Positions 431-39,419 are shown, counted from the stretch's first letter. The stretch is DNA of 64,000 bases from IMGVR_UViG_3300014494_000005:1-64000; one strand, 5' to 3'. A program made the numbers and translations. The notes: a model not told the origin generated them from the sequence alone.

Positions 431-462
431 ATTATACGTTCTAATTAGCATTTTGTTACAAA
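431..462 (-). promoter_or_regulatory. TTTGTAAC-N16-CGTATAAT promoter-like motif
   Basis: Motif with fixed 16-nt spacer, repeated at least 7 times in the window upstream of genes. Confidence 0.6.
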
Positions 463-466
463 ATTT

Positions 467-790
467 TTAATTAATATGTTCACAACGTTCAAAATTAATT
501 TCATTAAAATTTAAATTAATTTGACATTTATGTAATTTCCATATATTAGTATTATCATTTGGAATTATAAAAGCACTATCAAATAACTCATATTTTCCTT
601 CAATGTTATTTTCACCAACGACAATAAATTTAAATGGATTCCATTTTGATTTACCTGTAAATTGTTTTGTTCCATTATCATTTATTTTTTCTTCGATAAC
701 AAGAGTTGGATTTTCATTAAAATTTATTCTGAAAATAAAACTTCCCAAAATTAATTTACCATTTTTTACTTCATTTTTCATAATATTCAA
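467..790 (-). CDS. Hypothetical protein between attC-like elements 2 and 3
   Basis: 107-aa ORF; no recognisable motif. Confidence 0.65.
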   Translation of the reverse strand: MNIMKNEVKNGKLILGSFIFRINFNENPTLVIEEKINDNGTKQFTGKSKWNPFKFIVVGENNIEGKYELFDSAFIIPNDNTNIWKLHKCQINLNFNEINFERCEHIN

Positions 791-863
791 TTTTATTTAT
801 AATTATTCTTAAAAAGTTTTTGTTCGTTTTTCATATCAACATTTTACTTTAATAAACCGTACT

Positions 864-960
864 GTGTATAACAACGTGTATAAAACATAGCCAATTAAGG
901 TTTCTGGCTTATATCAAGTGTCGTGCGTGGCAACGTTTCATACACACAACCGTTAGCGTT
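864..960. repeat. attC-like palindromic element 3
   Basis: GTGTATAAC...GTGTATAAAACATAGCCA / TGGCAACGTTTCATACAC...GTTAGCGTT; shares TATAAAACAT.GCC and GGCA.CGTTTCATA with element 2. Confidence 0.7.
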
Positions 961-1135
961 CATTTGCCAACGCACTCTGATACATTTCTTCAAGGTCTTT
1001 AAAAAACTTATTTCCTTGAATTACTATCATTGATGGATTATATGTATTTACATATCTAGTGTAAACATCTTCAATTCTTTCATAACAATCGTGTTTATCT
1101 CTACCTTTTTCAGTATTAATCCATTGTAAATACAC
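953..1135 (-). CDS. Hypothetical 60-aa protein ending inside attC-like element 3
   Basis: Stop codon TAA lies within CGCTAAC (inverse-core-like site). Confidence 0.7.
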   Translation of the reverse strand: MYLQWINTEKGRDKHDCYERIEDVYTRYVNTYNPSMIVIQGNKFFKDLEEMYQSALANER

Positions 1136-1222
1136 TCTCGGCTTTGTTGCTGTTACTATTTTCAGTTCAGATACTTGTTTTTAAAGTCCATTTTAAATTT
1201 GTTTTGTATAACCAATACTACA

Positions 1223-1254
1223 TTAATACGTTCTAATTAGCATTTTGTTACAAA
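1223..1254 (-). promoter_or_regulatory. TTTGTAAC-N16-CGTATTA promoter-like motif (near-identical to 431-462)
   Basis: Same 16-nt spacer AAAATGCTAATTAGAA as the 431-462 copy. Confidence 0.6.
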
Positions 1255-1368
1255 AATTAACGTTTTTTATGAAAAAACTTCATTATTTTAATCCAAATTT
1301 TATCAATAAAAATTAATAAGTACATGAGAACTGCACCAAAAGTAACACCAATACAAAAATATAAAGAA

Positions 1369-1575
1369 TTAAATAGTTCCATTATCTTTATTATTTTTAA
1401 TGAAAATTACAATACCCCATATAGATAACATTAAAAATACTAATGCGCATATATATCCCCAAACAGGACGGTTTGGTTCAATTGTGGTTTTTGACATCGA
1501 GTATCCATAAATTAAGAAATACATTGCGAACATCAAAATCCTCAACACTTTCATTTTATATGGAATTATCTTCAT
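1369..1575 (-). CDS. Small membrane protein (2 TM)
   Basis: Two hydrophobic stretches. Confidence 0.6.
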   Translation of the reverse strand: MKIIPYKMKVLRILMFAMYFLIYGYSMSKTTIEPNRPVWGYICALVFLMLSIWGIVIFIKNNKDNGTI

Positions 1576-1615
1576 ATTATTTTACTATAAATAGTATGTT
1601 TAAAAGTATAATTAC

Positions 1616-1822
1616 TTATTTGTTTTGTAATTTTCTTACTTTATTGACTACTATTGGTCGTAATCCATCAAATTTTATGGTGTATTCAAACATATTACCA
1701 TATTTTATTTGTGTATCAGTAAGCTCATCAAAATGATGGGCATTAGTCCATATTTCTGATTTTTGAAGATTCTTTTGAATATTTTTATCTTCTATTGGCG
1801 AATAAACTTTTACGATTTCCAT
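1616..1822 (-). CDS. Hypothetical protein
   Basis: ORF co-directional with neighbours. Confidence 0.55.
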   Translation of the reverse strand: MEIVKVYSPIEDKNIQKNLQKSEIWTNAHHFDELTDTQIKYGNMFEYTIKFDGLRPIVVNKVRKLQNK

Positions 1823-3339: not shown

Positions 3340-4611
3340 ATGTTAAAATTATACAAATATAAACTAAAACCGGATAATAACCAAATTATTTTATTAAATA
3401 AACATTTTGGCTGTATTAGATTTATTTATAATTATTTTCTCAATGAACGTAAAAAAGAATATGAAACTAATAATCAAACACTTAATTATTATGATAATAC
3501 AAAAGCATTAACCGAATTAAAGCATTCAAATGAATATATTTGGCTTAATGAAATTTGTGCACAATCTTTACAACAGTCTCTTAAACATCTTGATGGAGCA
3601 TATAATGGATTTTTTAAAGGTAGGACAAAGTTTCCAAATTTTAAATCTAAACACAATAAAAATAGTTTTTGCGTTCCTCAAGCAGTAAAATTAATTAATA
3701 ATAAACTATATATACGTAAATTTAAAGGAGGAATTGGTGTTATTATTGATAGGAAATTTAAGGGAATTATAAAACAATGCACAATAACCAAAACACCAAC
3801 TAATGAATATTTTGTTAGTATTTTAGTTGAAACCGAACATGTTAAATTACCTAAAACTAATAAAAGTATTGGAATAGATTTGGGATTAAAAGATTTTGCA
3901 ATAACATCAGAAGGATTTAAATATAAAAACAATAAATATACTAAACAATATGAAAAGAAATTAAAAAAAGCACAACAACATTTATCAAAAAAAACAAAAA
4001 ATTCGAAAAAATTTGAACAACAAAGATTGAAAGTGGTTAAAATATACAAGAAGATAACCAATTCTCGTGTAGATAATCTACATAAAGTAAGTACTGACCT
4101 AATTAAAAAATATGACATAATTTGTTTAGAAGACCTTAATATTAAAGGTATGTCAACAAGATGCAAGCCAAAACAAGACAAAAATGGTAAGTATTTATCC
4201 AATGGTCAATCAGCAAAATCAGGACTTAATAAATCTATATCAAATGCTAGTTGGGGTACTTTTGTTGAAATGCTTAATTATAAAGCCAATTGGAATGATA
4301 AACAAATTGTTAAAATTAATAGATTTTATCCTTCAAGTAAAACATGTCATATTTGTGGCTATATAAATCAAGACTTAAATCTTTCTATTAGAGAATGGAA
4401 GTGTCCTAAATGTGGTATTGTTCATGATAGGGATATAAATGCTGCAAAAAACATATTAAAAGAAGGTCAGAAAATATTACTTAATGATTTAACAAATAAT
4501 ATTGACAATAACAAATCGTCAGGGACTGACGATAACAGACGTGGAGACCAAATAAGACCTGTTATAACGGGCACAATCGATGAAACGTCCAAAATTCTTA
4601 GCATAAGTTAA
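3340..4611 (+). mobile_element. tnpB: IS200/IS605-family TnpB RNA-guided endonuclease (no tnpA nearby)
   Basis: N-terminal HTH (YKYKLKP...FGCIRFIYN), RuvC-I IGIDLG, RuvC-II CLEDL, Zn ribbon CHICG...CPKCG, RuvC-III HDRDINAAKNI. Confidence 0.95.
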
Positions 4612-6973: not shown

Positions 6974-7159
6974 CTATTTTAATAGTTTTCGTATATCTTC
7001 TTCCATTATTATAATTTCATTAATTTTTTTTGAAAAAGAATCAAATTTATCTTTATCATATTTAGATATTAAGATATTAATAATCCTTCTATCAAATCCC
7101 ATTTTTTCCAGAAAAATATATTGTTTTTCATTTAAATATAATGCTATGTTATTCATCAA
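6974..7159 (-). CDS. Hypothetical protein
   Basis: 61-aa ORF. Confidence 0.5.
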   Translation of the reverse strand: MMNNIALYLNEKQYIFLEKMGFDRRIINILISKYDKDKFDSFSKKINEIIIMEEDIRKLLK

Positions 7160-7446
7160 TTTTTGTTATATTTTACTGCTCTTTTATACGTACCAACACT
7201 TCCAAACGGATTATGATTATATAATGATTTATCTGCGGTATATGCCGATATGTCAATCCAAATTTCATCACCGGATTTTAAATCAATCACAGATTTAGCA
7301 ATGCTATTGTTATCAACAAAACTATGTAGATTAACACAAGCAAGTCTTTTATTGGTATTCTGAAATCTAATTTCATAAAAATTGTTTCTTTTTACAATCT
7401 TATCAATCTTAAATAAACCAAAATTTCCGTTAAATTGAGTTTCCAT
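7156..7446 (-). CDS. Hypothetical protein
   Basis: 96-aa ORF directly downstream of a promoter motif. Confidence 0.6.
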   Translation of the reverse strand: METQFNGNFGLFKIDKIVKRNNFYEIRFQNTNKRLACVNLHSFVDNNSIAKSVIDLKSGDEIWIDISAYTADKSLYNHNPFGSVGTYKRAVKYNKN

Positions 7447-7470: not shown

Positions 7471-7502
7471 ATATTACGAAAAATTATTTAAATTGTTGCA
7501 TA
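7471..7502 (-). promoter_or_regulatory. Variant motif TGCAAC-N16-CGTAAT
   Basis: Same 16-nt spacing as the TGTAAC motif. Confidence 0.5.
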
Positions 7503-17871: not shown

Positions 17872-17941
17872 ATATATAATATTTTTAATTGTCAAATATA
17901 AACATTATAAAAATAATAAACAATTAAAAAATATTATTATT

Positions 17942-20174: not shown

Positions 20175-20184
20175 TATTTTTATT

Positions 20185-22336: not shown

Positions 22337-22912
22337 TTACTTTTTAAATAAATCAACATTATCTTCTTTACCGGATTTATATGCATTTTCAGTCACTTCG
22401 GAAGTAATTATTGTAATACCTTCTTTAAGAACTTTACCATTAGCATCTGCTAAATAACCTATATTATGACGACTACCAATAACAATACTGTTTGGAAATG
22501 TCTGGCACATAGTTTTATGTTGACGGTCAATATCAATAAGTTTTTCCTGTTCAACAAAGAAACCATTTCGTTCACCTTCAATAGCTGCCATCAATTTATC
22601 ATACAATTTTGTATCAAAATTTGGATTACTTTCTGTTATCCATTTCATTAATGAACCATCATTTTTTGAATAACGACCTGCAATAAGGTCAGGATAAATT
22701 TTTGCAAATGCATCTTTATACTGGTCAGCAACTTGTGCATCCTGATGAATAATTTTCCACATTTTATCAAAGAATGCAGCACATACTTTTTGCTGTGCAT
22801 CACCTGTTTGGTGAGTGCGTATTTCTGAGTTACTTACACTAACCACCCAGAGAAAGGCGAATAATGCGAATATTGCACATACTCCAATTCCAATAAATAA
22901 ATTTTTTTTCAT
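22337..22912 (-). CDS. LemA-like membrane-anchored protein
   Basis: N-terminal TM then helical domain ending FPNSIVIG. Confidence 0.5.
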   Translation of the reverse strand: MKKNLFIGIGVCAIFALFAFLWVVSVSNSEIRTHQTGDAQQKVCAAFFDKMWKIIHQDAQVADQYKDAFAKIYPDLIAGRYSKNDGSLMKWITESNPNFDTKLYDKLMAAIEGERNGFFVEQEKLIDIDRQHKTMCQTFPNSIVIGSRHNIGYLADANGKVLKEGITIITSEVTENAYKSGKEDNVDLFKK

Positions 22913-22955: not shown

Positions 22956-22986
22956 TAATACGAGCAAAGATACAAAATTGTTACAA
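22956..22986 (-). promoter_or_regulatory. TTGTAAC-N17-CGTATTA motif containing the Bacteroidota -7 element TATCTTTG
   Basis: Directly visible upstream of ORF 22337-22912. Confidence 0.55.
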
Positions 22987-23379
22987 TAATTCAGACAAAT
23001 ATTTAATAGAAATTTCACTTTGTTCAATTTCTTTTTTAATGTATGTTTCTATTATATCTTTTTTTTCTTTATCTTCTTCTTTAAAATATAATTTAAGCAT
23101 ATTCACCAAATTATTTAGTGGACTAAGTTTGTTTCTAATATCAGCACAAATAACACCCGCTTCAATTAAATCATATTTTATTAATTCATAATCATCTAAG
23201 TTAATTTCTTTTGGAAGTGGTGAGTGTTCTTCATAATATTTTTTTAATAAATCCATTGTTGCTGTAATATTCATTAGAACTGGAAGTATACATGTAAATA
23301 TCATATTTATACCACCAATATTGCTGATTTCAACAAATTCTTTTGGTTCTTTTTTAGTTCTAAGTGCTTTGATTTTCAT
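22981..23379 (-). CDS. Hypothetical protein
   Basis: 132-aa ORF. Confidence 0.6.
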   Translation of the reverse strand: MKIKALRTKKEPKEFVEISNIGGINMIFTCILPVLMNITATMDLLKKYYEEHSPLPKEINLDDYELIKYDLIEAGVICADIRNKLSPLNNLVNMLKLYFKEEDKEKKDIIETYIKKEIEQSEISIKYLSELL

Positions 23380-23702
23380 ATTGAAATTATTTTAGTTTTA
23401 CCTCTTTTTCTTAAAATTGGCATTATTGTATTTGCAAAAGAACTTCTAATTATTGTTACAATATATGCATAAACATTATCACTTCTATCTGGATTAAAAT
23501 TTAATACATGTTTACAACATGCATCATATGCATTAGTTTCACAAAGAATCTTATTGATTTCAATCATTATTGAATATCTTTTTTCAATTTCTTGATTAAT
23601 TATTTCAAAAAACATATCTTTAATTTCAAGTGTAAGTTCATTTAATTCTTTACAAAGAATTATTTCTTTTAATAATTGTTCTTTAAATTCTTTTGTTATC
23701 AT
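23376..23702 (-). CDS. Short T4 gp55-like (late sigma) domain protein
   Basis: CCKHVLNFNPDRSDNVYAYIVTIIRSSF resembles the gp55 region NFDPEKSxNPFAYFTQIIxxAF (recalled consensus). Confidence 0.5.
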   Translation of the reverse strand: MITKEFKEQLLKEIILCKELNELTLEIKDMFFEIINQEIEKRYSIMIEINKILCETNAYDACCKHVLNFNPDRSDNVYAYIVTIIRSSFANTIMPILRKRGKTKIISI

Positions 23703-26219: not shown

Positions 26220-26262
26220 TTTTTATTTTAAATTATTGCCAAATATATAAAATAAATTCGAA

Positions 26263-27439: not shown

Positions 27440-27820
27440 TTACTTTATTCTTACAACCCAACAATAACCAAACATTAAAGGACATGGATTGACTATTTCA
27501 TCATCTGATTCATCCATAACATTCATAAATTCAGAATAATCTTTTTCCCATACAGACCCCGGAATTTGATTTTGCATTCTTTTTATTTGAACATCAGCTT
27601 CTTCAATTTTCCATTGTCCTATTTCCTTAGAAATTATAGTATATAATGTTTTTATTTCACGAAAAGATATCAAGGTATTTAATGGAGCAATTCTTGTTAA
27701 AAAAAATGTTTTTATTTGAGACTTCAAATCATGTCCTTCAGAAAAGTCTTGTTCGATATTTACTTTAACTTCTGTTCCAGAATTTGGAGAAACATATGTA
27801 CATTCGAATTTTCTTAACAT
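27440..27820 (-). CDS. Hypothetical protein
   Basis: 126-aa ORF. Confidence 0.6.
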   Translation of the reverse strand: MLRKFECTYVSPNSGTEVKVNIEQDFSEGHDLKSQIKTFFLTRIAPLNTLISFREIKTLYTIISKEIGQWKIEEADVQIKRMQNQIPGSVWEKDYSEFMNVMDESDDEIVNPCPLMFGYCWVVRIK

Positions 27821-27837: not shown

Positions 27838-27868
27838 TAATACGAAAAACAATTTATATTGTTACAAA
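27838..27868 (-). promoter_or_regulatory. TTTGTAAC-N16-CGTATTA motif
   Basis: Spacer AATATAAATTGTTTTT = 16 nt. Confidence 0.6.
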
Positions 27869-27898
27869 AAAAGGGATATATTTTAATATATCCCTTTT
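27869..27898. terminator. Intrinsic terminator downstream of the vWA gene
   Basis: AAAAGGGATATATT-TT-AATATATCCCTTTT perfect hairpin with A/T tracts on both sides. Confidence 0.75.
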
Positions 27899-28831: not shown

Positions 28832-28833
28832 AA

Positions 28834-29028
28834 TTATTTAGTTTTAGTTGTTTCGTCATTGCATTCACAGTTTTCATCTGTACATTCGCAAGGTTTATCA
28901 CCTGTTTCTGTTACAGGTTCTGTGGTATCAGCAACTTTAGTTGCTTCTTCTGCAGTTTTTACTTCTGCATTTTCTTGTTCTTGTGCCATATCTTCGAAAG
29001 ACTTGGCATCATTTGTATTAAATCCCAT
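28834..29028 (-). CDS. Small acidic protein
   Basis: 64 aa, E/T-rich, three Cys. Confidence 0.55.
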   Translation of the reverse strand: MGFNTNDAKSFEDMAQEQENAEVKTAEEATKVADTTEPVTETGDKPCECTDENCECNDETTKTK

Positions 29029-29099
29029 AATTTAAAATTTTAATTGTTAATACTATTTAATTTAAATAAAACTCATTATATTTATATAAAAAAATTAAG

Positions 29100-29987
29100 T
29101 TACAAATTTAATAAATAAAATTTCTTTTCAAAATTTTTTGCCAATATTTCTCTATATTGTTTATATTCATCAACATGATTTTTATGTTTTGTTAACAAAA
29201 ATGTTAAGATATTTTGATTTACATTAACTTTATCCATTTTTAATTTAGTACCTGCTGCTGACTTATCTCCTAACAAATATAATGCAATTTTTTTACAAAG
29301 CTCCAAATCTATATCAGGAGTTGCTATTTTTTCTGAAAAAAGAGTGGTAGGATACCACATTTTATACTTTGCCGAAATTGTTTCAGCTTTCTTAAATAAT
29401 GTGGTCATATGATAGAAACTAATTATTATAATTCCATGAGTTTCAGGCACTACAAAGACTGTTGTAGGATTTAATCCCATATGAGAATAGCTAATTTGCC
29501 TTAACCATAGCACAAACTCGAACATTCTACTAAACAACCAATTAACATGAATTTGTTTTAATTTCTGTCCAGTAAGAGGAACACTACGGTTTTTTAAATT
29601 TATAGTAAGTTTATTTTTTTCTAAGACCATACTTTCTGGCAGATATCTATGAAAACTTTCTGACGCTTTGTCAGTTTTTGCCATAAGTTGTTTATAATTA
29701 TTTACTGATTTCGTAATTAATTTTCTATTAGCATCAGTTACAATATATTCGATTTTTTTTTCAAATACTCTAAAATCACCGCTTTCATCAGTAAATTTTG
29801 TACCATTTTCCAGAATATCTTTATAATTATTCATTTTCGCCATTGCTTCTGCTGCTAATGAATTTGGATGATAATCTGGATGAATGAGTTTACAATAATC
29901 CCTATACAATTTTTTCCAATCATCTGGGAATATATCTGATGGTTTATTTGATTTAATTAGTTTATCAATTAATTCACGGTCTGTCAT
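29100..29987 (-). CDS. J-domain-like (HPD) protein fused to a degenerate kinase-like domain
   Basis: YRDYCKLIHPDY...AMAKMN; SHMGLNPTTVFVVPETHGIIII catalytic-loop-like segment lacks Asp/Asn. Confidence 0.6.
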   Translation of the reverse strand: MTDRELIDKLIKSNKPSDIFPDDWKKLYRDYCKLIHPDYHPNSLAAEAMAKMNNYKDILENGTKFTDESGDFRVFEKKIEYIVTDANRKLITKSVNNYKQLMAKTDKASESFHRYLPESMVLEKNKLTINLKNRSVPLTGQKLKQIHVNWLFSRMFEFVLWLRQISYSHMGLNPTTVFVVPETHGIIIISFYHMTTLFKKAETISAKYKMWYPTTLFSEKIATPDIDLELCKKIALYLLGDKSAAGTKLKMDKVNVNQNILTFLLTKHKNHVDEYKQYREILAKNFEKKFYLLNL

Positions 29988-29992
29988 AATTT

Positions 29993-30190
29993 TTAATAAT
30001 TATTATTGTATTGTCTTAAAATACCTATTTCATAATCTTCCCATACTTCAATTTGTGCTCTTAAATATTTTTTAAGAACATCATCAGTAGCATCTGCTAA
30101 ATCTACATATAATGTTTTAATAATATCACCACAACGGACATATGCTTCATTATTTCTAATCACTGAGACAATTTTAACATTATTTCCCAT
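29993..30190 (-). CDS. Hypothetical protein
   Basis: 65-aa ORF. Confidence 0.55.
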   Translation of the reverse strand: MGNNVKIVSVIRNNEAYVRCGDIIKTLYVDLADATDDVLKKYLRAQIEVWEDYEIGILRQYNNNY

Positions 30191-30191
30191 A

Positions 30192-30455
30192 TTATTTTAT
30201 TTTTGAATGTAAAACACTATCAAGTTCTTTAATTTCAATTTTAATTGAATCTTTTGTGAGATAATTTTTATCGTGAAGATATTTCACAGTTTTATTAAAA
30301 CCATCCCAAAGACCTTGTTCATAAGTTTTTTGTGGATTTTGTTCTGTTAAAACTACAGTAGAGGGTTTAAAACCTTTATGTTTTTGTACAACAACAAAAA
30401 AAATACCAATTGCAATTATCGTAATAAATAATATAAAATTTATAATCCTTTTCAT
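30192..30455 (-). CDS. Small membrane-anchored protein
   Basis: N-terminal TM. Confidence 0.55.
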   Translation of the reverse strand: MKRIINFILFITIIAIGIFFVVVQKHKGFKPSTVVLTEQNPQKTYEQGLWDGFNKTVKYLHDKNYLTKDSIKIEIKELDSVLHSKIK

Positions 30456-30457
30456 AA

Positions 30458-31048
30458 TTAAAATGTTTTATGTATAAAAAATCTTTTTATTCTATAACAA
30501 ATATTAGGGGTTAAACCCGAATAATTATCGGTTTGAAAAAAGTTGAATTGTTGATTTAGAAGCATATCACTATCATCATCAATTATAGCAAAACGATAAA
30601 AATCATAATAATGAATACCAAACCATTTCATACAATTTTCTTTTAACCAAAGTGATATTTCAGTTCCTCTTTCAAATCCAGTATGCTTTGTTTTATCAAT
30701 AATAGTAAATGTTGCACCACAATATTTAAAAATTTCTTGAAGTCTTTCAAGGGTATGTCCATTTCTCATTGAAGCCGACAATACTACAGCAGAATTAGTT
30801 TCTTTACAAAGATTATTTAATAAATCTATGCGCATAGGACAAATTTCATTTTTATAATAATCTAATTTTGAAATTTCATTTGCTTTTAACATTTTGCGTA
30901 AATATTTCTTAACTGTTTTATAAAAAGGTATACCATCATATTGAGTTAAATGTTTATATCTCTCAGTATAAAACAATTGACAATTAAGTACCCCATCTAT
31001 ATCAAGAAAAATTATTGAATTATATTTATTAAGTTCCGCTTCCATCAA
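30458..31048 (-). CDS. HAD-superfamily phosphatase (HAD_SAK_2 RNA-repair type)
   Basis: IIFLDIDGVLN, VVLSAS.R, RGTEI..WL, FAIIDDDSDM. Confidence 0.85.
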   Translation of the reverse strand: MMEAELNKYNSIIFLDIDGVLNCQLFYTERYKHLTQYDGIPFYKTVKKYLRKMLKANEISKLDYYKNEICPMRIDLLNNLCKETNSAVVLSASMRNGHTLERLQEIFKYCGATFTIIDKTKHTGFERGTEISLWLKENCMKWFGIHYYDFYRFAIIDDDSDMLLNQQFNFFQTDNYSGLTPNICYRIKRFFIHKTF

Positions 31049-31259
31049 TTAATTCATCTACTTCTTCAAAAGTTTTTACTGTAACTTCACCACAATAATT
31101 TTCAAATAATGATTTTATATCTTTCCGAAAAACTTCAAGTTCTTCTTGATTATCAAAATAAAAATCATGTTGTAATTTCCATCGAACATCGTTTATACCA
31201 ATAGTTGGGTCTCCTTTAGATAAAACATGAAATCCACTAACTTTAATTATATTAATCAT
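31029..31259 (-). CDS. Hypothetical protein
   Basis: First gene of the leftward block. Confidence 0.55.
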   Translation of the reverse strand: MINIIKVSGFHVLSKGDPTIGINDVRWKLQHDFYFDNQEELEVFRKDIKSLFENYCGEVTVKTFEEVDELIDGSGT

Positions 31260-31271
31260 AATTTTTATTTT

Positions 31272-31303
31272 ATTAAACGAATCTTCTATCAGAAGGTTAC
31301 AAA
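31272..31303 (-). promoter_or_regulatory. TTTGTAAC-N16-CGTTTAAT motif at the strand-switch region
   Basis: Spacer CTTCTGATAGAAGATT = 16 nt; a divergent TATTTTTG -7 element precedes 31426. Confidence 0.6.
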
Positions 31304-31425
31304 CTTTTAAATATTTTTTGACAAATGTAAATAAAAAAATTAATAATACTATAATAATATTTATTTTTTATAAAAATTATAGTAAAAAAAATTTTTTATT
31401 TAAATTATTTCATTATTTTTGCATC

Positions 31426-31986
31426 ATGATAAATTTAGAAAAAATAAAAGAATTTGCGCAAAAATCTTATGATGATGCTAATTGTAAATATAATGATGGA
31501 AATTATTTTATTCATATTAATATGGTTGTCGATACATTAAATAATCATATGAATATATTTTGTAATCATAATGATTTTATTAATACTCTTGCAGCATGCT
31601 ACACACATGATTTGTTGGAAGATGCAAAAAAATCATATAATGATATCAAAATAATATCAAATAAAGATGTTGTAGACATTACATTAGCAGTTACTGATGT
31701 TCCAGCAGAAAATCGTTTGATGCGACATTTACTTACTATGGGTAAAACTGTAAGAGATTATCGTGCAATAATTCTTAAAATGTGTGATATGCTTGCTAAT
31801 GCTCAATATAGTAAAGAACATAATAGCTCAATGTATAAAAAATATGTTGAAGAATACGAATATCGCAAACCAATTTTTAAAAAAGCATTAACTTGGTATA
31901 AAGATAATCTCGATATGGATGAAGTTGAAAAACTTTGGGTAATATTGGATTATATTCACAATAATAAAAATATAAATAATTTATGA
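31426..31986 (+). CDS. HD_4 (Mesh1/SpoT-like) hydrolase
   Basis: YFIHINMV, ACYTHDLLED, V.DITLAVTD, ILKMCDMLAN; ATG 31426 preferred over the ORF-track start. Confidence 0.75.
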   Translation: MINLEKIKEFAQKSYDDANCKYNDGNYFIHINMVVDTLNNHMNIFCNHNDFINTLAACYTHDLLEDAKKSYNDIKIISNKDVVDITLAVTDVPAENRLMRHLLTMGKTVRDYRAIILKMCDMLANAQYSKEHNSSMYKKYVEEYEYRKPIFKKALTWYKDNLDMDEVEKLWVILDYIHNNKNINNL

Positions 31987-32528
31987 AAAATTTAGGACAT
32001 CTTATGCTTGACCTTGAAACAATGGGTAATAAAAGCAATGCAGTAATTGTTTCAATTGGTGCTGTTGAATTTGACCTTGAAACAGGTGAATTAGGTAAAG
32101 AATTTTATGAAAGAATTGATTTACAATCATGTCTTGATGTTGGCTTAATAGTTAATGGTAGTACACTTTACTGGTGGTTACAACAAAGTGAAGCAGCAAG
32201 AAATGAAATTTGTAAAAAAGGTAATGACCTCAGAAGTGCATTAGTTTTGTTCAATACTTTTATGATATTTGAAAATGATTTTAAAGATATTCAAATTTGG
32301 GGAAATGGTGCAAGATTTGATATTGGTATATTGGAGGATGCATATACTGCACTTAAATTAGGTACTCCTTGGAATTTTAGAAATGAAAGAGATGTACGTA
32401 CATTAGTTTCATTTGCTCCACAAGTTAAAGAACATTATCCTATAAGTGGTATGGTGCATTATGCGTTAGATGATTGTAAAAACCAAATTGGTTATTGTTG
32501 TGCTATTTGGCAGAAATTAAATAAATAA
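31983..32528 (+). CDS. DEDDh 3'-5' exo(ribo)nuclease (phage/Rv2179c-like)
   Basis: MLDLETMG, WGNGARFDIGIL, HYALDDC..Q. Confidence 0.88.
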   Translation: MKNLGHLMLDLETMGNKSNAVIVSIGAVEFDLETGELGKEFYERIDLQSCLDVGLIVNGSTLYWWLQQSEAARNEICKKGNDLRSALVLFNTFMIFENDFKDIQIWGNGARFDIGILEDAYTALKLGTPWNFRNERDVRTLVSFAPQVKEHYPISGMVHYALDDCKNQIGYCCAIWQKLNK

Positions 32529-32539
32529 ATTTAATTATC

Positions 32540-32780
32540 ATCATTAATGGTACTTTTACATACATATTTGTAATGAATTAACTAAATATATAAAAAAACC
32601 ATTAATGTAAATATTAAATCAACTATTAGATATAAAAATATTGGTGCTGTTCGTTTAAGTGACACTAAACAAGTAATTAAATTCATGGATTGGTTATATT
32701 ATGATTCAACAATTTATTTAATAAGAAAATATAATAAATTTAAAAATTTTAAATTATTATGGAATGGGAAGATGAATTAA
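32540..32780 (+). pseudogene. LAGLIDADG homing endonuclease C-terminal remnant
   Basis: ..GAVRLSDTKQVIKFMDWLYYDSTIYLIRKYNKF resembles the C-terminus of 33617-34603; frameshift/stop upstream, no start codon. Confidence 0.55.
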
Positions 32781-33145
32781 AAAAACATATTCTTAAATGG
32801 ATTAAAGAAGAATTTGACCCAGAAGCCAATATGAATAATTTATGTTTTATTGATATTGGATTACCAGAGGATATTGATTTTAATGAATTTTCTATTCCAA
32901 ATTTAGGTAAATTTTATGCTTATTCTATAATGAAAGAAAATTATGAACAAGCAGAAAAAATTAAAGAAATGCTTGCTAAAAAAGGTAGTAACGTTAATTT
33001 AGATATTAATGAAAAAACCAGAGAAGGTATTCTTGAAATATCTTTTGTTCCTGAAAAAGGTGTGGAAAAAATTGAAATAAATATGAAAGTATTAAAAAAT
33101 GGTTTAAGTATTGATTGGGATAAGGAATTAAAAGATAAATTATAA
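32759..33145 (+). CDS. Hypothetical protein
   Basis: 128-aa ORF. Confidence 0.6.
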   Translation: MEWEDELKKHILKWIKEEFDPEANMNNLCFIDIGLPEDIDFNEFSIPNLGKFYAYSIMKENYEQAEKIKEMLAKKGSNVNLDINEKTREGILEISFVPEKGVEKIEINMKVLKNGLSIDWDKELKDKL

Positions 33146-33156
33146 TAATTAATTAT

Positions 33157-33507
33157 ATGAAAAATTTAACAGCAGAAACATTTAAAGAAAAAATATTTGA
33201 CTTTTCAAAAGAAACTGAATGGTCATTTAAAAGTAGTAAACCTGCAATTATTGATTTTTATGCTGATTGGTGTTCACCTTGCAAAGCAATTGCTCCAGTT
33301 CTTGATGAACTTAATAAGGAATATCAAAATATTGATTTTTATAAAGTAGATACTGATGCAGAAAATGAAATAGCATCTGCTTTTAATATTAAAAATATAC
33401 CTTCAATACTTTTTATACCTCTTACAGGTATGCCACAAATGTCTTTAGGTGCAATGCCTAAAGAAATATTTAAGAAAATAATTAAAGAAGTATTAGGTAT
33501 TGAATAA
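33157..33507 (+). CDS. trxA: Thioredoxin
   Basis: IDFYADWCSPCK, FYKVDTD, cis-Pro IPSILF. Confidence 0.95.
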   Translation: MKNLTAETFKEKIFDFSKETEWSFKSSKPAIIDFYADWCSPCKAIAPVLDELNKEYQNIDFYKVDTDAENEIASAFNIKNIPSILFIPLTGMPQMSLGAMPKEIFKKIIKEVLGIE

Positions 33508-33521
33508 AAAATATTCGTAAT

Positions 33522-33553
33522 TTTGTAACCTATTAATTTTTTATTAGTATAAG
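33522..33553 (+). promoter_or_regulatory. TTTGTAAC-N16-AGTATAAG motif
   Basis: 16-nt spacer. Confidence 0.5.
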
Positions 33554-33616
33554 TAAAAAAATGGACAACAATAATATTTTTGGATATGGAGAAGTATTTA
33601 TAACTAAAATATAATT

Positions 33617-34603
33617 ATGGATACAATACAAACATTTGAAAAAGAAATTATTGAATTATCGAAAATTAAATCGCAAAAAGAAATTGCATTACTATATAAC
33701 AGTACTCAGCCAAAAATTAGTAATATTTTAAGGAAAAATAAAATTATAAATAAAAAGAGTAGATTAAATATGAGTCATCTTGCACTTAATATTGACTATT
33801 TTAAAGAAATTAATTCTAATGATAAAGCATATTGGCTTGGATTTATATGTGCTGATGGTAATATTAAAAAAACAAACAATAAGGTTAGTTTAATATCTAA
33901 AGATTTAGAAGTAATTGTAGGATTTAAAGAAGCAATTGGCGCAGAACATAAAATTAGTAAAAGGGAAATTTTTGATAAACGAACAAATAAAACATATACT
34001 GGATATAGTATTCAGATTGGCAATGAAATATTTACCCAGCATTTAATTAATTTAGGTATTACTAATAATAAAACAAATGTATTGGAATTTCCAAATATTG
34101 AAGAGAAATACTATTCATATTTTATTGCTGGATTATTTGATGGTGATGGGTCAATTTCATTGAAAGGGATAAATAAAAATAGATTAGTAATTAATTTAAT
34201 TTCTACAAATGAAATGTTATTATATATTAAAGAATATATTTTAAATAAATTAAATATTAAACCAAAATATTGTTGTGATGTTAGTAAAAATAAACAAAAT
34301 GTTTGGAAAATGTATTTGTATTCAGATGCACATAGATTTTTAAAATTTATATATTGTGATGCTAATTTCAAATATTATTTAAAAAGAAAATATAATATAT
34401 TTCTAAAAAATATTAATTATCGAAATAATATTCGTCATTTAAAAAAAGTAATACAATGTGATAAAAATATGAATATAATTAAAATATGGAATACAATTAG
34501 AGAAGCAAGTATTGAAATGAATTGTCACGAAAACACGTTAAATTATAATATAAAGAAAGAAAGATTATTTAAAAATTATCATTGGAAACATGAAAATGAA
34601 TAA
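33617..34603 (+). CDS. LAGLIDADG homing endonuclease (two motifs, C-terminal NUMOD1-like)
   Basis: YWLGFICADGNI and YFIAGLFDGDGSI; KVIQCD..IWNTIREA; AAGTATTTATA at 33592-33602. Confidence 0.9.
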   Translation: MDTIQTFEKEIIELSKIKSQKEIALLYNSTQPKISNILRKNKIINKKSRLNMSHLALNIDYFKEINSNDKAYWLGFICADGNIKKTNNKVSLISKDLEVIVGFKEAIGAEHKISKREIFDKRTNKTYTGYSIQIGNEIFTQHLINLGITNNKTNVLEFPNIEEKYYSYFIAGLFDGDGSISLKGINKNRLVINLISTNEMLLYIKEYILNKLNIKPKYCCDVSKNKQNVWKMYLYSDAHRFLKFIYCDANFKYYLKRKYNIFLKNINYRNNIRHLKKVIQCDKNMNIIKIWNTIREASIEMNCHENTLNYNIKKERLFKNYHWKHENE

Positions 34604-35051
34604 TAATGTGGTTTTATTTTTAGATTTAGATGGTGTTATGTGTACCACCACTCAATATTATACTAATAAAGATAAATGGAATTCCGAATATCATCGTTAT
34701 AAATTCGATGAAAAATGCGTGAAAGTGTTTAATCAAATTATTGAAAAAACAAAACCAATTATTATATTGTCAAGCGATTGGAAAGATAGTTATACTATTG
34801 AACAACTTAATCGTATTTTTGAAATAAATAAGGTCGATGTAAAAATTTTTGATATTACACCGCAATTATGGGGTATTAAATATTTTAAATTAACTGAATT
34901 AGAAGAATGTCGTGCAAATGAAATATTAAAATATGTTGAAGGCCATAAGATAAAAAAATTTATTGCAATTGATGACCTTGATTTATCGAAATGGCTTCCT
35001 AACAATTTCATTAGAACACCAATGGCAAATGAAGGTATTAAAACAAAGTAA
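34590..35051 (+). CDS. HAD-superfamily phosphatase (HAD_SAK_2 type), second copy
   Basis: VLFLDLDGVM, IILSSDWK, CRANEI, FIAIDDLD. Confidence 0.85.
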   Translation: MKMNNNVVLFLDLDGVMCTTTQYYTNKDKWNSEYHRYKFDEKCVKVFNQIIEKTKPIIILSSDWKDSYTIEQLNRIFEINKVDVKIFDITPQLWGIKYFKLTELEECRANEILKYVEGHKIKKFIAIDDLDLSKWLPNNFIRTPMANEGIKTK

Positions 35052-37137: not shown

Positions 37138-37139
37138 TT

Positions 37140-37385
37140 ATGAAAACAAATTTATTTATAATTCTTTGGAAAAAAGAAAAAATCCATTGGAAACGAATTG
37201 TAATATTATTCAATCGTTTTAATGGTTGGATGTATAAATTAACTTTTGGTTTAATTGTTGCTTTACTTGTAACAATATTTCATTATGCTTTTGCATTAAT
37301 GCATACACTTTATGAAATATTTTTATTTATTTTTGCAAGGCAAGCATTTAAAGCAAATTTACAAAAAATGGCATTAAAAGTATGA
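37140..37385 (+). CDS. Small membrane protein
   Basis: Hydrophobic segment. Confidence 0.55.
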   Translation: MKTNLFIILWKKEKIHWKRIVILFNRFNGWMYKLTFGLIVALLVTIFHYAFALMHTLYEIFLFIFARQAFKANLQKMALKV

Positions 37386-37909
37386 ATAAAAATAAATTAA
37401 TATGTGTCGATGTTGAAAGTGATGGTGGATATATGCCAGATTATTCAATAGTTTGTTTTGCTGCAATAATTGTTGAACCATCACTTTCTAAAACATTTTA
37501 TGGACAAATGCGACCAATTTCTGATAAATGGAATCCTGATGCATTAGCTATAAGTGGTTTTAGTAGAGAAGAACATCTTAAATTTGATGAACCTTATATA
37601 GTAATGAAAAGATTTGCAGATTGGTTAAAAGAAAATGTAAATGGTCAACCAATAGGTATTTCAGATAATAATGGTTATGATTTTGGTGTATGTTTAAATT
37701 ATTATTTTCATAAATTTTATGGTAGTAATCCATTTTCTTGGAGTTCAAGAAGGATTGGGGATTTGTTTTGCGGTGTTGAACACGATATGTGGTATAAATG
37801 GAAAAAACATAGAATAACATCCCATAATCATAACCCCAAATTTGATGTAAAAGGAAATGCTGAAGCATTATTGTATTTATCTAAAACATATAATATTAAA
37901 TTACCATAG
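37382..37909 (+). CDS. DEDDh 3'-5' exonuclease
   Basis: CVDVESDG, SDNNGYDFG, HNHNPKFDV. Confidence 0.85.
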   Translation: MNKNKLICVDVESDGGYMPDYSIVCFAAIIVEPSLSKTFYGQMRPISDKWNPDALAISGFSREEHLKFDEPYIVMKRFADWLKENVNGQPIGISDNNGYDFGVCLNYYFHKFYGSNPFSWSSRRIGDLFCGVEHDMWYKWKKHRITSHNHNPKFDVKGNAEALLYLSKTYNIKLP

Positions 37910-38005
37910 TGTTATGATAATCCATCAAGAATTTTTAATGAAATTAATTGAAAATAATATTCATTATAAAAATAAAAAATTTAAAGTAATTGGTGAATAT
38001 AAAAA

Positions 38006-38794
38006 ATGAGAGACCATATTTTAATTGAAGATAAATTTGGATTATTAAAAAGTACACCAGATAAACTTTTACATGGAAATAAACCTACAGTACAATCTGC
38101 ATTAAATAAATATGAATATATTGTAAATAAATTTAATTATATTCATTTCAACAAATATGTTTATAAAAAATTTCTTTATTTAAAAGAAACTACAGAATTT
38201 GAATTTATTTGCCCCAAACATGGTATAATGAAAACATTAGTTAATTATCATTTAAAGCATGGGTGTTCAAAATGTGGAATGGAATTAGCAAAAAATAGAC
38301 GACCTAAATCTTTAAATAATTTTATAAACCAATCTAATGCAGTACATAATAATAAATATAATTATTTTAATGCCAAATATATTAATACTTCAACCAAATT
38401 AATTATAACATGTTCAATACATGGTGATTTTTTACAAACACCCAATAAACATTTACAAGGTAGGGGTTGTAAAAAATGTAGTAGAGAAAATAATAATTTT
38501 AAAAAATTGGACTGGATTTCCAAAAAAGGTATTGCAACCTTTTATATTTTAAATTGTTGGAATGAAAATGAAAAATTTTATAAATATGGAATTTGCACTG
38601 GAGAAATAAAAAATAGGTTTAATTCAAAAACAAAAATGCCATATAATTATACAATAGAAATTAAATTACAAAATCTTAACAGGTCAATAATTTGGGAAAT
38701 GGAAGAAAAATATAAAAAGAATAATTTATTAATTCATTATAAACCTAAAATTTATTTTAAGGGTTCATCTGAATGTATTATTAATATAAACTAA
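38006..38794 (+). CDS. Putative homing endonuclease: CxxHG repeats (DUF723-like) + GIY-YIG-like C-terminus
   Basis: CPKHG..CSKC, CSIHG..CKKC; FYIL...FYKYGI...NRF. Confidence 0.7.
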   Translation: MRDHILIEDKFGLLKSTPDKLLHGNKPTVQSALNKYEYIVNKFNYIHFNKYVYKKFLYLKETTEFEFICPKHGIMKTLVNYHLKHGCSKCGMELAKNRRPKSLNNFINQSNAVHNNKYNYFNAKYINTSTKLIITCSIHGDFLQTPNKHLQGRGCKKCSRENNNFKKLDWISKKGIATFYILNCWNENEKFYKYGICTGEIKNRFNSKTKMPYNYTIEIKLQNLNRSIIWEMEEKYKKNNLLIHYKPKIYFKGSSECIININ

Positions 38795-38866
38795 ATAAGT
38801 TATGTTAAGAAATATCAGGAATTATTAAAAATTTAATTAATTTTACACTAAATAATTAAGAGTATT

Positions 38867-39127
38867 ATGGATAATTTTAAAAACATATGGTTTATTTTTC
38901 CAGTAATGGTATATTACTTTTTAGAATCTATTGTTATTGCGATTTTTATTTCCGTTATATGGAAATTAGTATTACAATCACTTACTACAATTAATATTAC
39001 ATATTTTCAATGGGTATGTATAATTTGGATTATTAAAGTGATATTTTTTGATGTATTTAAGTTATTATCTGGATTATCTACAATGAATAATCAAAATAAA
39101 GAAACCGAAGAAAAACAAATATTATGA
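38867..39127 (+). CDS. Small membrane protein
   Basis: Two hydrophobic segments. Confidence 0.6.
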   Translation: MDNFKNIWFIFPVMVYYFLESIVIAIFISVIWKLVLQSLTTINITYFQWVCIIWIIKVIFFDVFKLLSGLSTMNNQNKETEEKQIL

Positions 39128-39339
39128 AATATGCGAAAGAAACTCCAAGACTAACCGTTAAATTTATTAATGCTGATACAGAAAAAACACTTTTTGAAAT
39201 AAATGACAGGACATGGTTAAATATAGGTGAAATTTTTTCTGATTATTACATTGATGCAGTAATGAAAACTGAGATGAAAGACAAAAAAATGCCTACCAAT
39301 CTTATGGTATTGGCAGTCGGTGAATATAAGTTAAAATAA
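39124..39339 (+). CDS. Hypothetical protein
   Basis: 71-aa ORF. Confidence 0.6.
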   Translation: MKYAKETPRLTVKFINADTEKTLFEINDRTWLNIGEIFSDYYIDAVMKTEMKDKKMPTNLMVLAVGEYKLK

Positions 39340-39361
39340 GACCATTTTTTATTTAAAATAC

Positions 39362-39390
39362 AAAAACACGTACAAAAATACGTGTTTTTT
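39362..39390 (+). terminator. Intrinsic terminator
   Basis: AAAACACGTA-CAAAAA-TACGTGTTTTTT. Confidence 0.7.
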
Positions 39391-39419
39391 GTAACATTTA
39401 TGCTTGTTTTTCGTATATT
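39388..39419 (+). promoter_or_regulatory. TTTGTAAC-N16-CGTATATT motif
   Basis: Spacer ATTTATGCTTGTTTTT = 16 nt; overlaps the terminator U-tract. Confidence 0.6.

What the first reader, a model, noticed from the sequence alone, without database searches (positions are those of the whole stretch)
431..39419. Phage-specific bipartite promoter grammar TGTAAC-N16-CGTAT
Copies occur at 431-462(-), 1223-1254(-), 7471-7502(-, TGCAAC), 27838-27868(-), 31272-31303(-), 33522-33553(+) and 39388-39419(+), all with an exact 16-nt spacer, plus 22956-22986(-) with 17. All lie intergenic or nearly so and point at the next gene. The motif differs from the Bacteroidota TAnnTTTG elements also present (e.g. ~12040, ~15500, ~26240, ~40507). 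A bipartite -35/-10 shape like this suits an ECF sigma, and the window encodes one (62539-63156). That pairing is inference.
Basis: partly seen in the sequence, partly recalled or inferred. Interest (0 to 1): 0.6.

Follow-up and report, generated by a model that had tools for sequence, protein, structure and literature searches.

The report
ECF-sigma promoters of a jumbo phage
A repeated two-part DNA signal (TGTAAC, 16 bases, CGTAT) marks about 58 promoters of a 349-kb phage that probably infects Bacteroidota; the signal has the classic form read by ECF sigma factors, and the phage encodes two of them.

Summary
Across the whole 348,923-bp phage genome there are 58 such sites, against about 0.1-0.3 expected. 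Of these, 52 are intergenic, 49 sit 100 nt or less upstream of a co-oriented ORF, and five others precede tRNA genes.

The consensus ttTGTAAC(A/C)TTTT-N-tCGTATAat matches the grammar of ECF-type promoters such as B. subtilis sigma-W. It shares the AAC -35 core, the T-tract next to the -35, the 16-nt spacer and the CGTA -10. The motif is conserved in related jumbo phages, at 30-58 copies per complete genome, and each complete genome carries two ECF sigma genes. In two relatives, 14 ORFs start exactly 8 nt after CGTAT, which fixes the likely transcription start.

A second ECF sigma at 292.6 kb heads the densest promoter array in every genome examined. One lineage switched its -35 to TGCAAT; there the second sigma's recognition helix differs, while the window sigma's helix is unchanged.

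This is a new member of a known kind, a phage sigma-directed temporal class. No RNA 5' ends or biochemistry are available.

The parts
434..460 (-). ECF-type promoter: -35 TGTAAC at 455-460, -10 CGTAT at 434-438, N16 spacer. It precedes a ~120-nt leader and a 60-aa ORF at 129-311. It is a near-identical copy of the 1226 site.
   Evidence: Exact match; PWM score 20.8 bits; 33-nt direct repeat with 1226-1258.
1226..1252 (-). ECF-type promoter, N16 spacer. Next co-oriented ORF is 953-1135, 91 nt downstream.
   Evidence: Exact match; PWM score 18.4 bits.
7474..7500 (-). ECF-type promoter variant TGCAAC-N16-CGTAA. ORF 7156-7446 starts 28 nt downstream.
   Evidence: PWM score 23.7 bits. TGCAAC occurs in 7 of 42 N16 seed sites genome-wide.
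22958..22985 (-). ECF-type promoter with an N17 spacer. The spacer contains a host-type TATCTTTG box, so this may be a dual promoter. It drives 22337-22912 (phrog_1383, virion structural protein).
27840..27866 (-). ECF-type promoter, exact consensus. ORF 27440-27820 starts 20 nt downstream.
   Evidence: Exact match; PWM score 26.3 bits.
27869..27898 (.). Palindromic terminator-like hairpin that abuts the -35 of the 27840 promoter, marking a transcription-unit boundary.
   Evidence: also visible in the sequence.
31275..31301 (-). ECF-type promoter of the rare 'CGTT' -10 subclass (TGTAACC-N16-CGTTT). The other four members of this subclass flank the second sigma gene. ORF 31029-31259 starts 16 nt downstream.
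   Evidence: PWM score 25.3 bits; list of the CGTT subclass.
33524..33550 (+). ECF-type promoter variant TGTAACC-N16-AGTAT. It is followed by a GTATTTAT box at 33594-33601 and then ORF 33617-34603 (phrog_4645, endonuclease).
   Evidence: PWM score 21.7 bits.
39390..39416 (+). ECF-type promoter, the best in the window. ORF 39443-40045 starts 27 nt downstream.
   Evidence: Exact match; PWM score 29.3 bits.
39362..39389 (.). Palindromic terminator-like hairpin that abuts the -35 of the 39390 promoter.
62539..63189 (-). ECF-family sigma factor 'sigma-1' (216-aa ORF). Its 5' end overlaps the primase-like gene 63077-64147, so the true start may be internal. [quoted passage not shown] It is co-transcribed with the primase-like gene from a conserved host-type promoter (TTTG-N19-TATATTTG at G000 64152-64159), which lies just outside the window.
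   Evidence: PF04542 4e-13 and PF07638 27.3 bits, above its cut-off. TIGR02937 79.8 bits against a cut-off of 42.9. Closest PDB entry is SigW 5WUQ at 6e-9. Promoter. Alignment.
23376..23702 (-). Candidate T4 gp55-like late sigma (108 aa). It is not part of the ECF promoter class. It is relevant because it could account for the separate GTATTTAT (late) promoter class.
   Evidence: phrog_234 'late sigma transcription factor' E 7.5e-6. Partial PF04542 hit E 0.009. 41% identical homolog in G002. The evidence is weak.

Best explanation
The motif is the promoter of a phage-specific transcription class. Host (probably Bacteroidota) core RNA polymerase is redirected by a phage-encoded ECF-type sigma factor. 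The sigma-4 domain reads the -35 element tTGTAAC(A/C)TTTT. The sigma-2 domain reads the -10 element CGTAT(A), 16 nt further on. Transcription starts about 8-9 nt after CGTAT.

The class comprises about 58 promoters in the 349-kb genome, eight of them in the window. They drive:
- arrays of small ORFs at 289-326 kb
- rIIA and rIIB homologs
- nucleic-acid enzymes
- tRNA clusters
- three small non-coding units

This looks like an early-delayed or middle class. It lies between host-sigma-A promoters (TTTG-N19-TAnnTTTG) and a third class, aGTATTTATa, that precedes structural genes.

What is shown: the motif's reality, its position and orientation, its ECF grammar, its conservation across the phage family, and its co-occurrence with two phage ECF sigma genes.

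What is inferred: that a phage ECF sigma, rather than a host one, reads it, and which of the two does. My best guess is sigma-2 (G000 292628-293194, outside the window), at about 0.55, against about 0.3 for the window's sigma-1. Sigma-1 may act upstream of sigma-2 or on the CGTT -10 subclass.
For: (1) Enrichment and geometry. There are 58 sites at 17 bits or more, against 0.1-0.3 in Markov shuffles. 52 are intergenic although only 8.3% of the genome is (binomial P about 2e-49). 49 have a co-oriented ORF start within 100 nt, and 5 of the rest precede tRNA genes. The top intergenic dyad is GTAAC-N16-CGTA.

(2) Two conserved blocks with a free spacer. Information content is 1.4-2.8 bits in the cores and near 0 at spacer positions 11-19. 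A T-tract follows the -35.

(3) Grammar. This matches published ECF promoters: sigma-W -35 tGAAACnTTTt with -10 CGTA (PMC5758882).

(4) Sigma genes. The phage encodes two ECF sigmas. TIGR02937 scores are 79.8 and 99.0 bits against a cut-off of 42.9. The closest solved structure for both is B. subtilis SigW. No phage RNA polymerase was detected with PF00562 or PF00940.

(5) Family-wide conservation. Exact hits number 58, 30, 18, 11 and 7 in five relatives whose sigma-1 is 54-69% identical, against 0-1 for the reversed-pattern control. Two further complete genomes have 58 and 42. All five complete or near-complete genomes carry both sigmas.

(6) Start-site inference. Over 161 sites in four genomes, no ORF starts closer than 7 nt to CGTAT. 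There is a spike of 15 at exactly 8 nt, consistent with leaderless mRNAs.

(7) Unit boundaries. Terminator hairpins abut the -35 at two window sites.

(8) Host. The host looks like Bacteroidota. Only 1.3% of genes have a Shine-Dalgarno-like sequence, TTTG/TAnnTTTG promoters are present, and there is no excess of sigma-70-type matches.

(9) Evidence for sigma-2 specifically. Its gene is followed within about 50-400 nt by the first promoter of an array in G001, G002, G009, G010, G011 and G018. It lies inside the array in G000, and G019 shows two sites within about 900 nt downstream. In two small 47%-GC contigs that carry only a sigma-2-like gene, TGAAAC-N16-CGTAT follows that gene directly. In G010 the -35 is TGCAAT (29 sites against 0 TGTAAC). 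There the sigma-2b helix differs (SVLSMIARGKK against TVKATIMRCRE or SVKGMINRCK), while the sigma-1 helix TSSTxSNRVNYxKTKLKK is invariant.
Against: - There is no direct evidence of transcription initiation. The peat metatranscriptome data are contigs only. They cover parts of the region but cannot show 5' ends or strand.
- Gene calls come from my own greedy ORF caller, not a trained gene finder.
- The host has not been identified, so a host ECF sigma cannot be excluded.
- The sigma-2 assignment rests on synteny and on a single lineage with an altered -35 (n=1).
- In G000, sigma-2's own promoter is itself ECF-type (TGTAACC-N16-CGTTT). Some ECF activity must therefore pre-exist, which favours sigma-1 acting first.
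- Sigma-1 is the sigma with a conserved host-type early promoter.
- No complete genome lacks either sigma, so there is no natural knock-out.
- PhiKZ-type divergent RNA polymerases might escape Pfam detection.
Confidence: 0.8

Rival explanations
1. The window's sigma-1 (62539-63189) is made early from the host-type promoter together with primase, and it reads the bulk TGTAAC-N16-CGTAT promoters. Sigma-2 serves only a small auto-regulated regulon (the CGTT -10 subclass around its own gene) or some other target.
For: Sigma-1 lies behind a TTTG-N19-TATATTTG promoter that is conserved in G000, G001, G002 and G010, which gives the right temporal order. Sigma-1 homologs were the handle that found every motif-bearing relative. 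Sigma-2's own promoter has GTT in place of GTA in three genomes: CGTTT, CGTTA and AGTTT. A -10 difference is the kind that separates sigma-X from sigma-W (PMC5758882).
Against: The sigma-1 region-4.2 helix is invariant even in G010, where the -35 changed to TGCAAT. There are no motif copies within 20 kb of sigma-1 in any of 30 loci, apart from one site in L015. Sigma-1 has an atypical 60-80-aa low-complexity linker and weaker sigma-4 Pfam scores. In the small contigs G020 and G021, only a sigma-2-like gene is seen next to the motif.
Confidence: 0.3
2. A host ECF sigma factor reads the motif. The phage borrows a host stress regulon's promoter grammar, and the phage sigmas have other targets.
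For: The grammar is generic ECF. Bacteroidota carry many ECF sigmas (established knowledge). G000's sigma-2 needs some pre-existing ECF activity for its own promoter.
Against: Host ECFs are normally held inactive by anti-sigma factors. The phage family always carries its own two ECFs along with the motif. The -35 switch in G010 is phage-lineage-specific and is accompanied by a change in a phage sigma helix. The sigma-2 gene is syntenic with the arrays.
Confidence: 0.07
3. The motif is not a promoter. It would instead be a repeated cassette spread by duplication or recombination, or the binding site of a dimeric regulator.
For: Sites in the 289-298 kb array share extended flanks and a conserved 5' leader (..ataaaccaataaaaacaataaagcaATG). 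Three sites are identical over more than 30 nt, so some copies are paralogous.
Against: - The spacer is free while the two cores are fixed.
- The motif is asymmetric and strictly co-oriented with the downstream gene.
- There is a hard 7-8-nt minimum and a spike in distance to the ATG.
- It is conserved in genomes with unrelated flanks and at 35% GC.
- It lies directly after terminators and upstream of tRNA genes.
Confidence: 0.05

Closest known systems
B. subtilis ECF sigma-W (and sigma-V/X/M) promoters: tGAAACnTTTt - N16 - CGTA
   Same: The AAC core of the -35, a homopolymeric T-tract proximal to the -35, the 16-17-nt spacer and the CGTA -10 are all shared (PMC5758882). SigW is also the closest solved structure and the best-named NCBIfam hit for both phage sigmas.
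   Different: - The -35 is TGTAAC, with TGCAAC or TGAAAC tolerated and TGCAAT in one lineage.
- The -10 is extended to CGTATAAT.
- The sigmas score far below the SigW equivalog cut-off (84.8 and 45.6 bits against 209).
- They are phage-encoded, and no anti-sigma partner was detected.
- The probable host is Bacteroidota, not Bacillota.
Phage sigma cascades (SPO1 gp28 then gp33/34; T4 early/middle/late with gp55)
   Same: A phage-encoded sigma-family protein redirects host core polymerase to a phage-specific promoter class, giving temporal classes. This phage also has rIIA and rIIB, a tail sheath and a candidate gp55-like protein. Group-2 jumbo phages lack an RNA polymerase but encode sigmas (PMC7824862).
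   Different: Here the factor is a canonical two-domain ECF sigma with canonical ECF promoter grammar. It is neither a minimal gp55-type nor an RpoD-like sigma, and no MotA/AsiA-type appropriation is evident. The ECF reclassification explicitly did not capture phage ECFs (PMC7826278).
'RNA polymerase sigma-W factor' genes of crAss-like Suoliviridae
   Same: These are Bacteroidota-associated phages that encode an ECF sigma 26-33% identical to sigma-2.
   Different: Their genomes show no excess of G[AT]AAC-N16/17-CGTA over the control. The regulon described here is therefore not shared with them.
Bacteroidota sigma-A promoters (TTTG -33 / TAnnTTTG -7)
   Same: These promoters are present in the same genome, upstream of other genes including the primase/sigma-1 operon.
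   Different: The sequence, the spacing and the genes served all differ. Thirteen genes have both kinds of element upstream, which may indicate dual promoters.

Membership tests
ECF (group 4) sigma-70-family sigma factor, applied to sigma-1 (window 62539-63189) and sigma-2 (G000 292628-293194) | Sigma-2 domain (region 2) present | tested here: met
   PF04542 scores 49.3 bits for sigma-1 and 44.3 bits for sigma-2, against a cut-off of 24.
ECF (group 4) sigma-70-family sigma factor | Sigma-4 domain (region 4.2 helix-turn-helix) present | tested here: met
   Sigma-2: PF08281 37.8 bits against a cut-off of 25.7. Sigma-1: PF04545 22.4 and PF08281 20.5 bits are just below their cut-offs, but PF07638 Sigma70_ECF scores 27.3 against 21.1 over residues 156-208. 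The region-4 helix aligns across the whole family.
ECF (group 4) sigma-70-family sigma factor | Whole-protein match to the sigma70-ECF superfamily model; small size, without regions 1.1 or 3 | tested here: met
   TIGR02937 scores 79.8 and 99.0 bits against a cut-off of 42.9. The proteins are 216 and 188 aa, with no other Pfam domain. Caveat: sigma-1 has a 60-80-aa low-complexity linker, which is atypical for ECFs.
ECF (group 4) sigma-70-family sigma factor | Cognate anti-sigma factor encoded next to the sigma gene (common in the family, not universal) | tested here: not met
   The small ORFs flanking sigma-2 (292340-292552 and 293254-293436) and the 454-aa ORF after sigma-1 have no PHROG or Pfam hits. 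Absence is plausible for a phage sigma.
SigW equivalog (NCBIfam NF007223 / TIGR02948) | Score above the curated equivalog cut-off | tested here: not met
   84.8 bits (sigma-2) and 45.6 bits (sigma-1) against a cut-off of 209. They resemble SigW but are not members.
ECF-type promoter | -35 element with a conserved AAC | tested here: met
   AAC was fixed by the seed pattern in the 42 N16 seed sites. The PWM scan, which does not require it, still finds AAC in 56 of the 58 sites at 17 bits or more; the other two read TGTAAT. G010 uses AAT instead.
ECF-type promoter | -10 element with a conserved CGT | tested here: met
   CGTA was likewise fixed by the seed pattern. In the PWM scan only four sites at 17 bits or more depart from CGT: two TGT, one AGT and one GGT.
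ECF-type promoter | Rigid 16-17-nt spacer, often with a T-tract proximal to the -35 | tested here: met
   55 of the 58 sites have N16 and 3 have N17. Positions +7 to +10 are T in 29-35 of the 42 seed sites. Compare PMC5758882.
ECF-type promoter | Transcription start about 6-10 nt downstream of the -10, dependent on the cognate sigma | not testable with these tools
   Support is indirect only: a hard minimum at 7 nt and a spike at 8 nt between CGTAT and the ATG. RNA contigs give no 5' ends.
Bacteroidota sigma-A promoter | TAnnTTTG at -7 and TTTG at -33 | tested here: not met
   The motif's cores do not contain these elements. The three N17 sites do carry an embedded TATCTTTG in the spacer.

The most novel reading that the evidence does not exclude
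A family of T4-like jumbo phages of peat and soil Bacteroidota runs a four-tier sigma programme:
- host sigma-A (TTTG/TAnnTTTG)
- ECF sigma-1
- ECF sigma-2
- a gp55-like late sigma (aGTATTTATa)

In this reading, canonical ECF sigmas have taken the place of MotA/AsiA-type middle control. The two ECFs are told apart by the -10 (CGTT against CGTA). Lineages re-target the -35 (TGTAAC, TGAAAC or TGCAAT) by changing the sigma-2 recognition helix. That would amount to a natural set of orthogonal ECF/promoter pairs that also drive tRNA arrays and small RNAs.
Probability: 0.3. Interest if true: 0.65.

Novelty: new member of a known kind. Interest (0 to 1): 0.5.

Why it matters
Phage-encoded ECF sigmas were explicitly left out of the ECF classification (PMC7826278), and the comparative jumbo-phage overview I checked never mentions ECF sigmas (PMC7824862). 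This genome offers a large, clean phage ECF regulon: about 58 promoters, conserved across at least seven large genomes. It includes a natural -35 specificity switch and a predicted start site.

Three consequences follow:
- The temporal programme of an uncultured Bacteroidota jumbo-phage family becomes directly testable.
- Candidate orthogonal sigma/promoter pairs become available for Bacteroidota, where standard sigma-70 parts do not work.
- The motif helps annotation of these genomes: transcription units, leaderless genes, tRNA operons and new small RNAs.

Tried and rejected
- **Metatranscriptome evidence.** The phage occurs in peat, permafrost and bioreactor runs. Four RNA runs hold parts of 29001-35000, but only as contigs. 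No contig crosses the 31255-31592 divergent promoter gap. Contigs cannot show starts or strand, so this is inconclusive.
- **crAss-like phages with sigma-2-like genes.** They show no excess of the motif, so the idea of a shared regulon was rejected.
- **Phage RNA polymerase.** No PF00562 or PF00940 hit was found. The T7-type model had no positive control, and phiKZ-type enzymes could be missed.
- **Sigma-70-type consensus scan.** 172 matches against 161 expected, so there is no signal.
- **Rfam on the window and on 286-324 kb.** No matches, so the three non-coding units remain unnamed.
- **Anti-sigma search near the sigmas.** Nothing was found.
- **Looking for a complete genome that lacks one sigma.** None exists in the set.
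- **G010.** A first look found no TGTAAC motif. Unbiased k-mers then revealed the TGCAAT variant.
- **Literature searches.** Neither a search for the motif words nor one for phage or jumbo-phage ECF sigmas turned up a description of this regulon.
- **TAG recoding, suggested by a CTA-anticodon tRNA.** TAG is rare (14 of 375 stops), but no ORF extends on read-through. No alternative genetic code was used.
- **Searches not run.** I did not run the large protein searches, because the family scans already placed both sigmas.

Full report
**Context**

The window is the first 64 kb of a 348,923-bp IMG/VR virus record. CheckV rates it 100% complete, and its GC content is 26%. The phage has these features:
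- It encodes 33 tRNAs.
- It has a tail sheath, rIIA and rIIB homologs, and many nucleic-acid enzymes.
- No RNA polymerase is detectable.
- Only 1.3% of its genes have a Shine-Dalgarno-like sequence, and an A-rich tract precedes start codons.
- TTTG-N19-TAnnTTTG promoters are present.
- Canonical sigma-70-type matches are not enriched.

The same DNA occurs in peat, permafrost and bioreactor metagenomes.

**Checking the observation**

The exact pattern TGTAAC-N16-CGTAT occurs four times in the window, against 0.01 expected. One N17 copy is also present.

I built a 36-nt PWM from genome-wide seeds and iterated it. The score distribution is bimodal. There are 55 N16 sites at 14-16 bits or more, against 0.3-0.75 in Markov shuffles.

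Of the 58 sites:
- 52 are intergenic, although intergenic DNA is only 8.3% of the genome (binomial P about 2e-49).
- 49 have a co-oriented ORF start within 100 nt.
- Of the other nine, five precede tRNA genes, among them one that leads through a short ORF to an anticodon-CTA tRNA. Separately, the site at 282807 sits 16 nt before a tRNA-His gene.
- Three are identical promoters in front of paralogous non-coding units of about 95 nt.

Two unbiased analyses recover the motif independently. CGTATA, TTCGTA and TGTAAC top the upstream-enriched hexamers that are not pure A/T. GTAAC-N16-CGTA is the most frequent G/C-containing dyad in intergenic DNA.

**What the motif looks like**

The consensus is ttTGTAAC(A/C)TTTT - 9 free positions - t(t/a)CGTATAat. 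Information is concentrated in the two cores and in a T-tract just after the -35. The rest of the spacer is uninformative.

This is the published grammar of ECF promoters. For B. subtilis sigma-W the -35 is tGAAACnTTTt and the -10 is CGTA. The last -10 positions discriminate between paralogous ECFs, and the T-tract proximal to the -35 is a described ECF feature (PMC5758882).

At two window sites, a palindromic terminator hairpin abuts the -35. The motif therefore sits exactly at transcription-unit boundaries.

**Sigma factors**

The genome encodes two ECF-family sigmas:
- Sigma-1 lies in the window at 62539-63189(-).
- Sigma-2 lies at G000 292628-293194(+).

Both pass the sigma70-ECF superfamily model, and both have SigW as their closest solved structure. 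Neither reaches any equivalog cut-off.

A third, weak candidate is a gp55-like 'late sigma' at 23376-23702(-).

**Comparative evidence**

Sigma-1 homologs at 44-69% identity identify a family of large IMG/VR phage contigs. The exact motif is abundant in them: 58, 30, 18, 11 and 7 copies, against 0-1 for a reversed-pattern control. It is also present in most of the smaller fragments.

Two more complete genomes, found through sigma-2, have 58 and 42 copies. Every complete or near-complete genome (G000, G001, G002, G018, G019) carries both a sigma-1-like and a sigma-2-like gene.

Full PWM and ORF analysis of G001 and G002 reproduces the intergenic, co-oriented geometry, even at 35% GC.

Over 161 sites in four genomes, no ORF begins closer than 7 nt to CGTAT. 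Fifteen begin at exactly 8 nt, and a broad mode follows at 18-33 nt. This is what a fixed transcription start about 8-9 nt after the -10 would produce, with a subset of leaderless mRNAs.

**Which sigma reads the motif?**

The evidence leans the other way, though not decisively.

Evidence favouring sigma-2:
- Sigma-2's gene is followed within about 50-400 nt by the first promoter of a dense array in G001, G002, G009, G010, G011 and G018. It lies inside the array in G000, and G019 shows two sites within about 900 nt downstream.
- In two small 47%-GC contigs that show only a sigma-2-like gene, TGAAAC-N16-CGTAT follows that gene directly.
- The 20 kb around sigma-1 is free of the motif in 29 of 30 loci.
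- In G010 the -35 has switched cleanly to TGCAAT, with the same N16 spacing and the same CGTAT: 29 copies against 0 TGTAAC.
- The sigma-1 region-4.2 helix is the same in G010 as everywhere else, while the sigma-2b helix differs at several positions.

Evidence favouring sigma-1:
- Sigma-1 always lies behind a primase-like gene with a conserved host-type promoter, which makes it an early product.
- Sigma-2's own promoter carries GTT instead of GTA in the -10 in three genomes.

A cascade of sigma-1, then the CGTT promoters including sigma-2's own, then sigma-2 reading the bulk CGTAT promoters is therefore plausible. It remains inference.

**Temporal class**

Genes behind the ECF-type promoters include rIIA, rIIB, a Mom-like protein, an endonuclease, a transcription regulator, many small ORFs, tRNAs and small non-coding units.

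A separate single-block motif, aGTATTTATa..aAA, lies 15-17 nt before start codons. It has 84, 59, 62 and 28 near-start copies in the four genomes examined. It precedes the tail sheath and many large ORFs. It probably marks the late class, perhaps read by the gp55-like candidate.

**Negative and inconclusive results**

- crAss-like Suoliviridae encode sigma-2-like 'sigma-W' genes but lack the motif.
- Rfam finds nothing in the window or in 286-324 kb.
- RNA contigs from peat metatranscriptomes overlap the region but cannot show 5' ends.
- No anti-sigma factor was found.

**Verdict**

The ECF-promoter interpretation is well supported by sequence grammar, geometry and comparative co-occurrence. 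The specific pairing with the window's sigma is unproven and is probably not the whole story.

In kind this is a phage sigma-directed promoter class, a known strategy. It is carried out here by canonical ECF sigmas in an uncultured family of jumbo phages that probably infect Bacteroidota. Phage ECFs were left out of the ECF classification (PMC7826278), and the jumbo-phage overview I checked does not mention ECF sigmas (PMC7824862).

Noticed in passing
window 3310(+), 12104(-), 12113(+), 15856(-), 33594(+), 41501(+), 42720(+), 46190(-), 48244(-), 51840(-), 53003(-), 54403(-), 62526(-); genome-wide: A second conserved single-block motif, aGTATTTATa..aAA, lies 15-17 nt before start codons and has no -35 element. 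It has 84 near-start intergenic copies in G000, and 59, 62 and 28 in G001, G002 and G010. It precedes the tail sheath and many large ORFs, so it is probably the late promoter class.
   Followed up: partly
window 23376-23702 (-): A 108-aa ORF weakly matches phrog_234 'late sigma transcription factor' (T4 gp55-like, E 7.5e-6) and part of Sigma70_r2 (E 0.009). A 41% identical homolog exists in G002. It lies in an operon with DNA ligase behind a TAnnTTTG promoter at 26240.
   Followed up: partly
G000 301260-301400, 306406-306540, 308137-308270 (L087:15255-15440; L088:2401-2586; L088:4132-4317): Three identical, top-scoring ECF-type promoters (33-35 bits) precede paralogous non-coding units of about 95 nt. 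Each unit ends in a conserved TAGAATCATTCTA hairpin. None has an Rfam match. These are candidate phage small RNAs.
   Followed up: partly
G000 134.5 kb and 238-283 kb: The genome has 33 tRNA genes. One, at 268386-268463, has anticodon CTA and would act as an amber suppressor. Several tRNA clusters lie behind ECF-type promoters. TAG is a rare stop (14 of 375 genes), but no ORF extends on read-through, so nothing shows recoding.
   Followed up: partly
IMG/VR contig behind L027 (G010, 148 kb): This lineage switched the -35 hexamer from TGTAAC to TGCAAT, keeping the N16 spacing and the CGTAT -10 (29 copies against 0). It carries three ECF sigma genes.
   Followed up: yes
window 22958-22985 (-); G000 240262-240289 and 258469-258496 (+): The only N17 sites each contain a host-type TATCTTTG box inside the spacer. 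They may be dual host/ECF promoters. Two of them head tRNA clusters.
   Followed up: no
window 3340-4611 (+): A TnpB/IS605 OrfB-type gene (HTH_OrfB_IS605, OrfB_IS605 and the Cas12f1-like TNB domain) is preceded by a GTATTTAT box.
   Followed up: no
window 26263-27420 (-): This ORF is an adenylosuccinate synthetase homolog (PF00709, 1e-40). In phages such genes can be PurZ, which makes 2-aminoadenine for DNA. I did not examine it further.
   Followed up: no
window 15946-17895 (-), 19338-20243 (-), 21016-22059 (-), 57178-60504 (-), 60686-61093 (+): The window also encodes an FtsH-like AAA+/M41 protease, a tRNA-His guanylyltransferase (Thg1-like), an RNA ligase, a fused SbcD-SbcC-like nuclease/ATPase (1108 aa) and an Hsp20 chaperone.
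   Followed up: no
G000 289-299 kb: In an array of small ORFs, each ORF has its own ECF-type promoter and a conserved 31-35-nt leader (..ataaaccaataaaaacaataaagcaATG). These look like duplicated promoter-leader cassettes.
   Followed up: partly
window 100-460 (-) and 860-1252 (-): The two identical promoters at 434 and 1226 are followed by 90-120-nt, relatively G/C-rich leaders with repeated GTATAAC/GTTATAG words, before 60-aa ORFs. These could be structured 5' UTRs or small RNAs.
   Followed up: no
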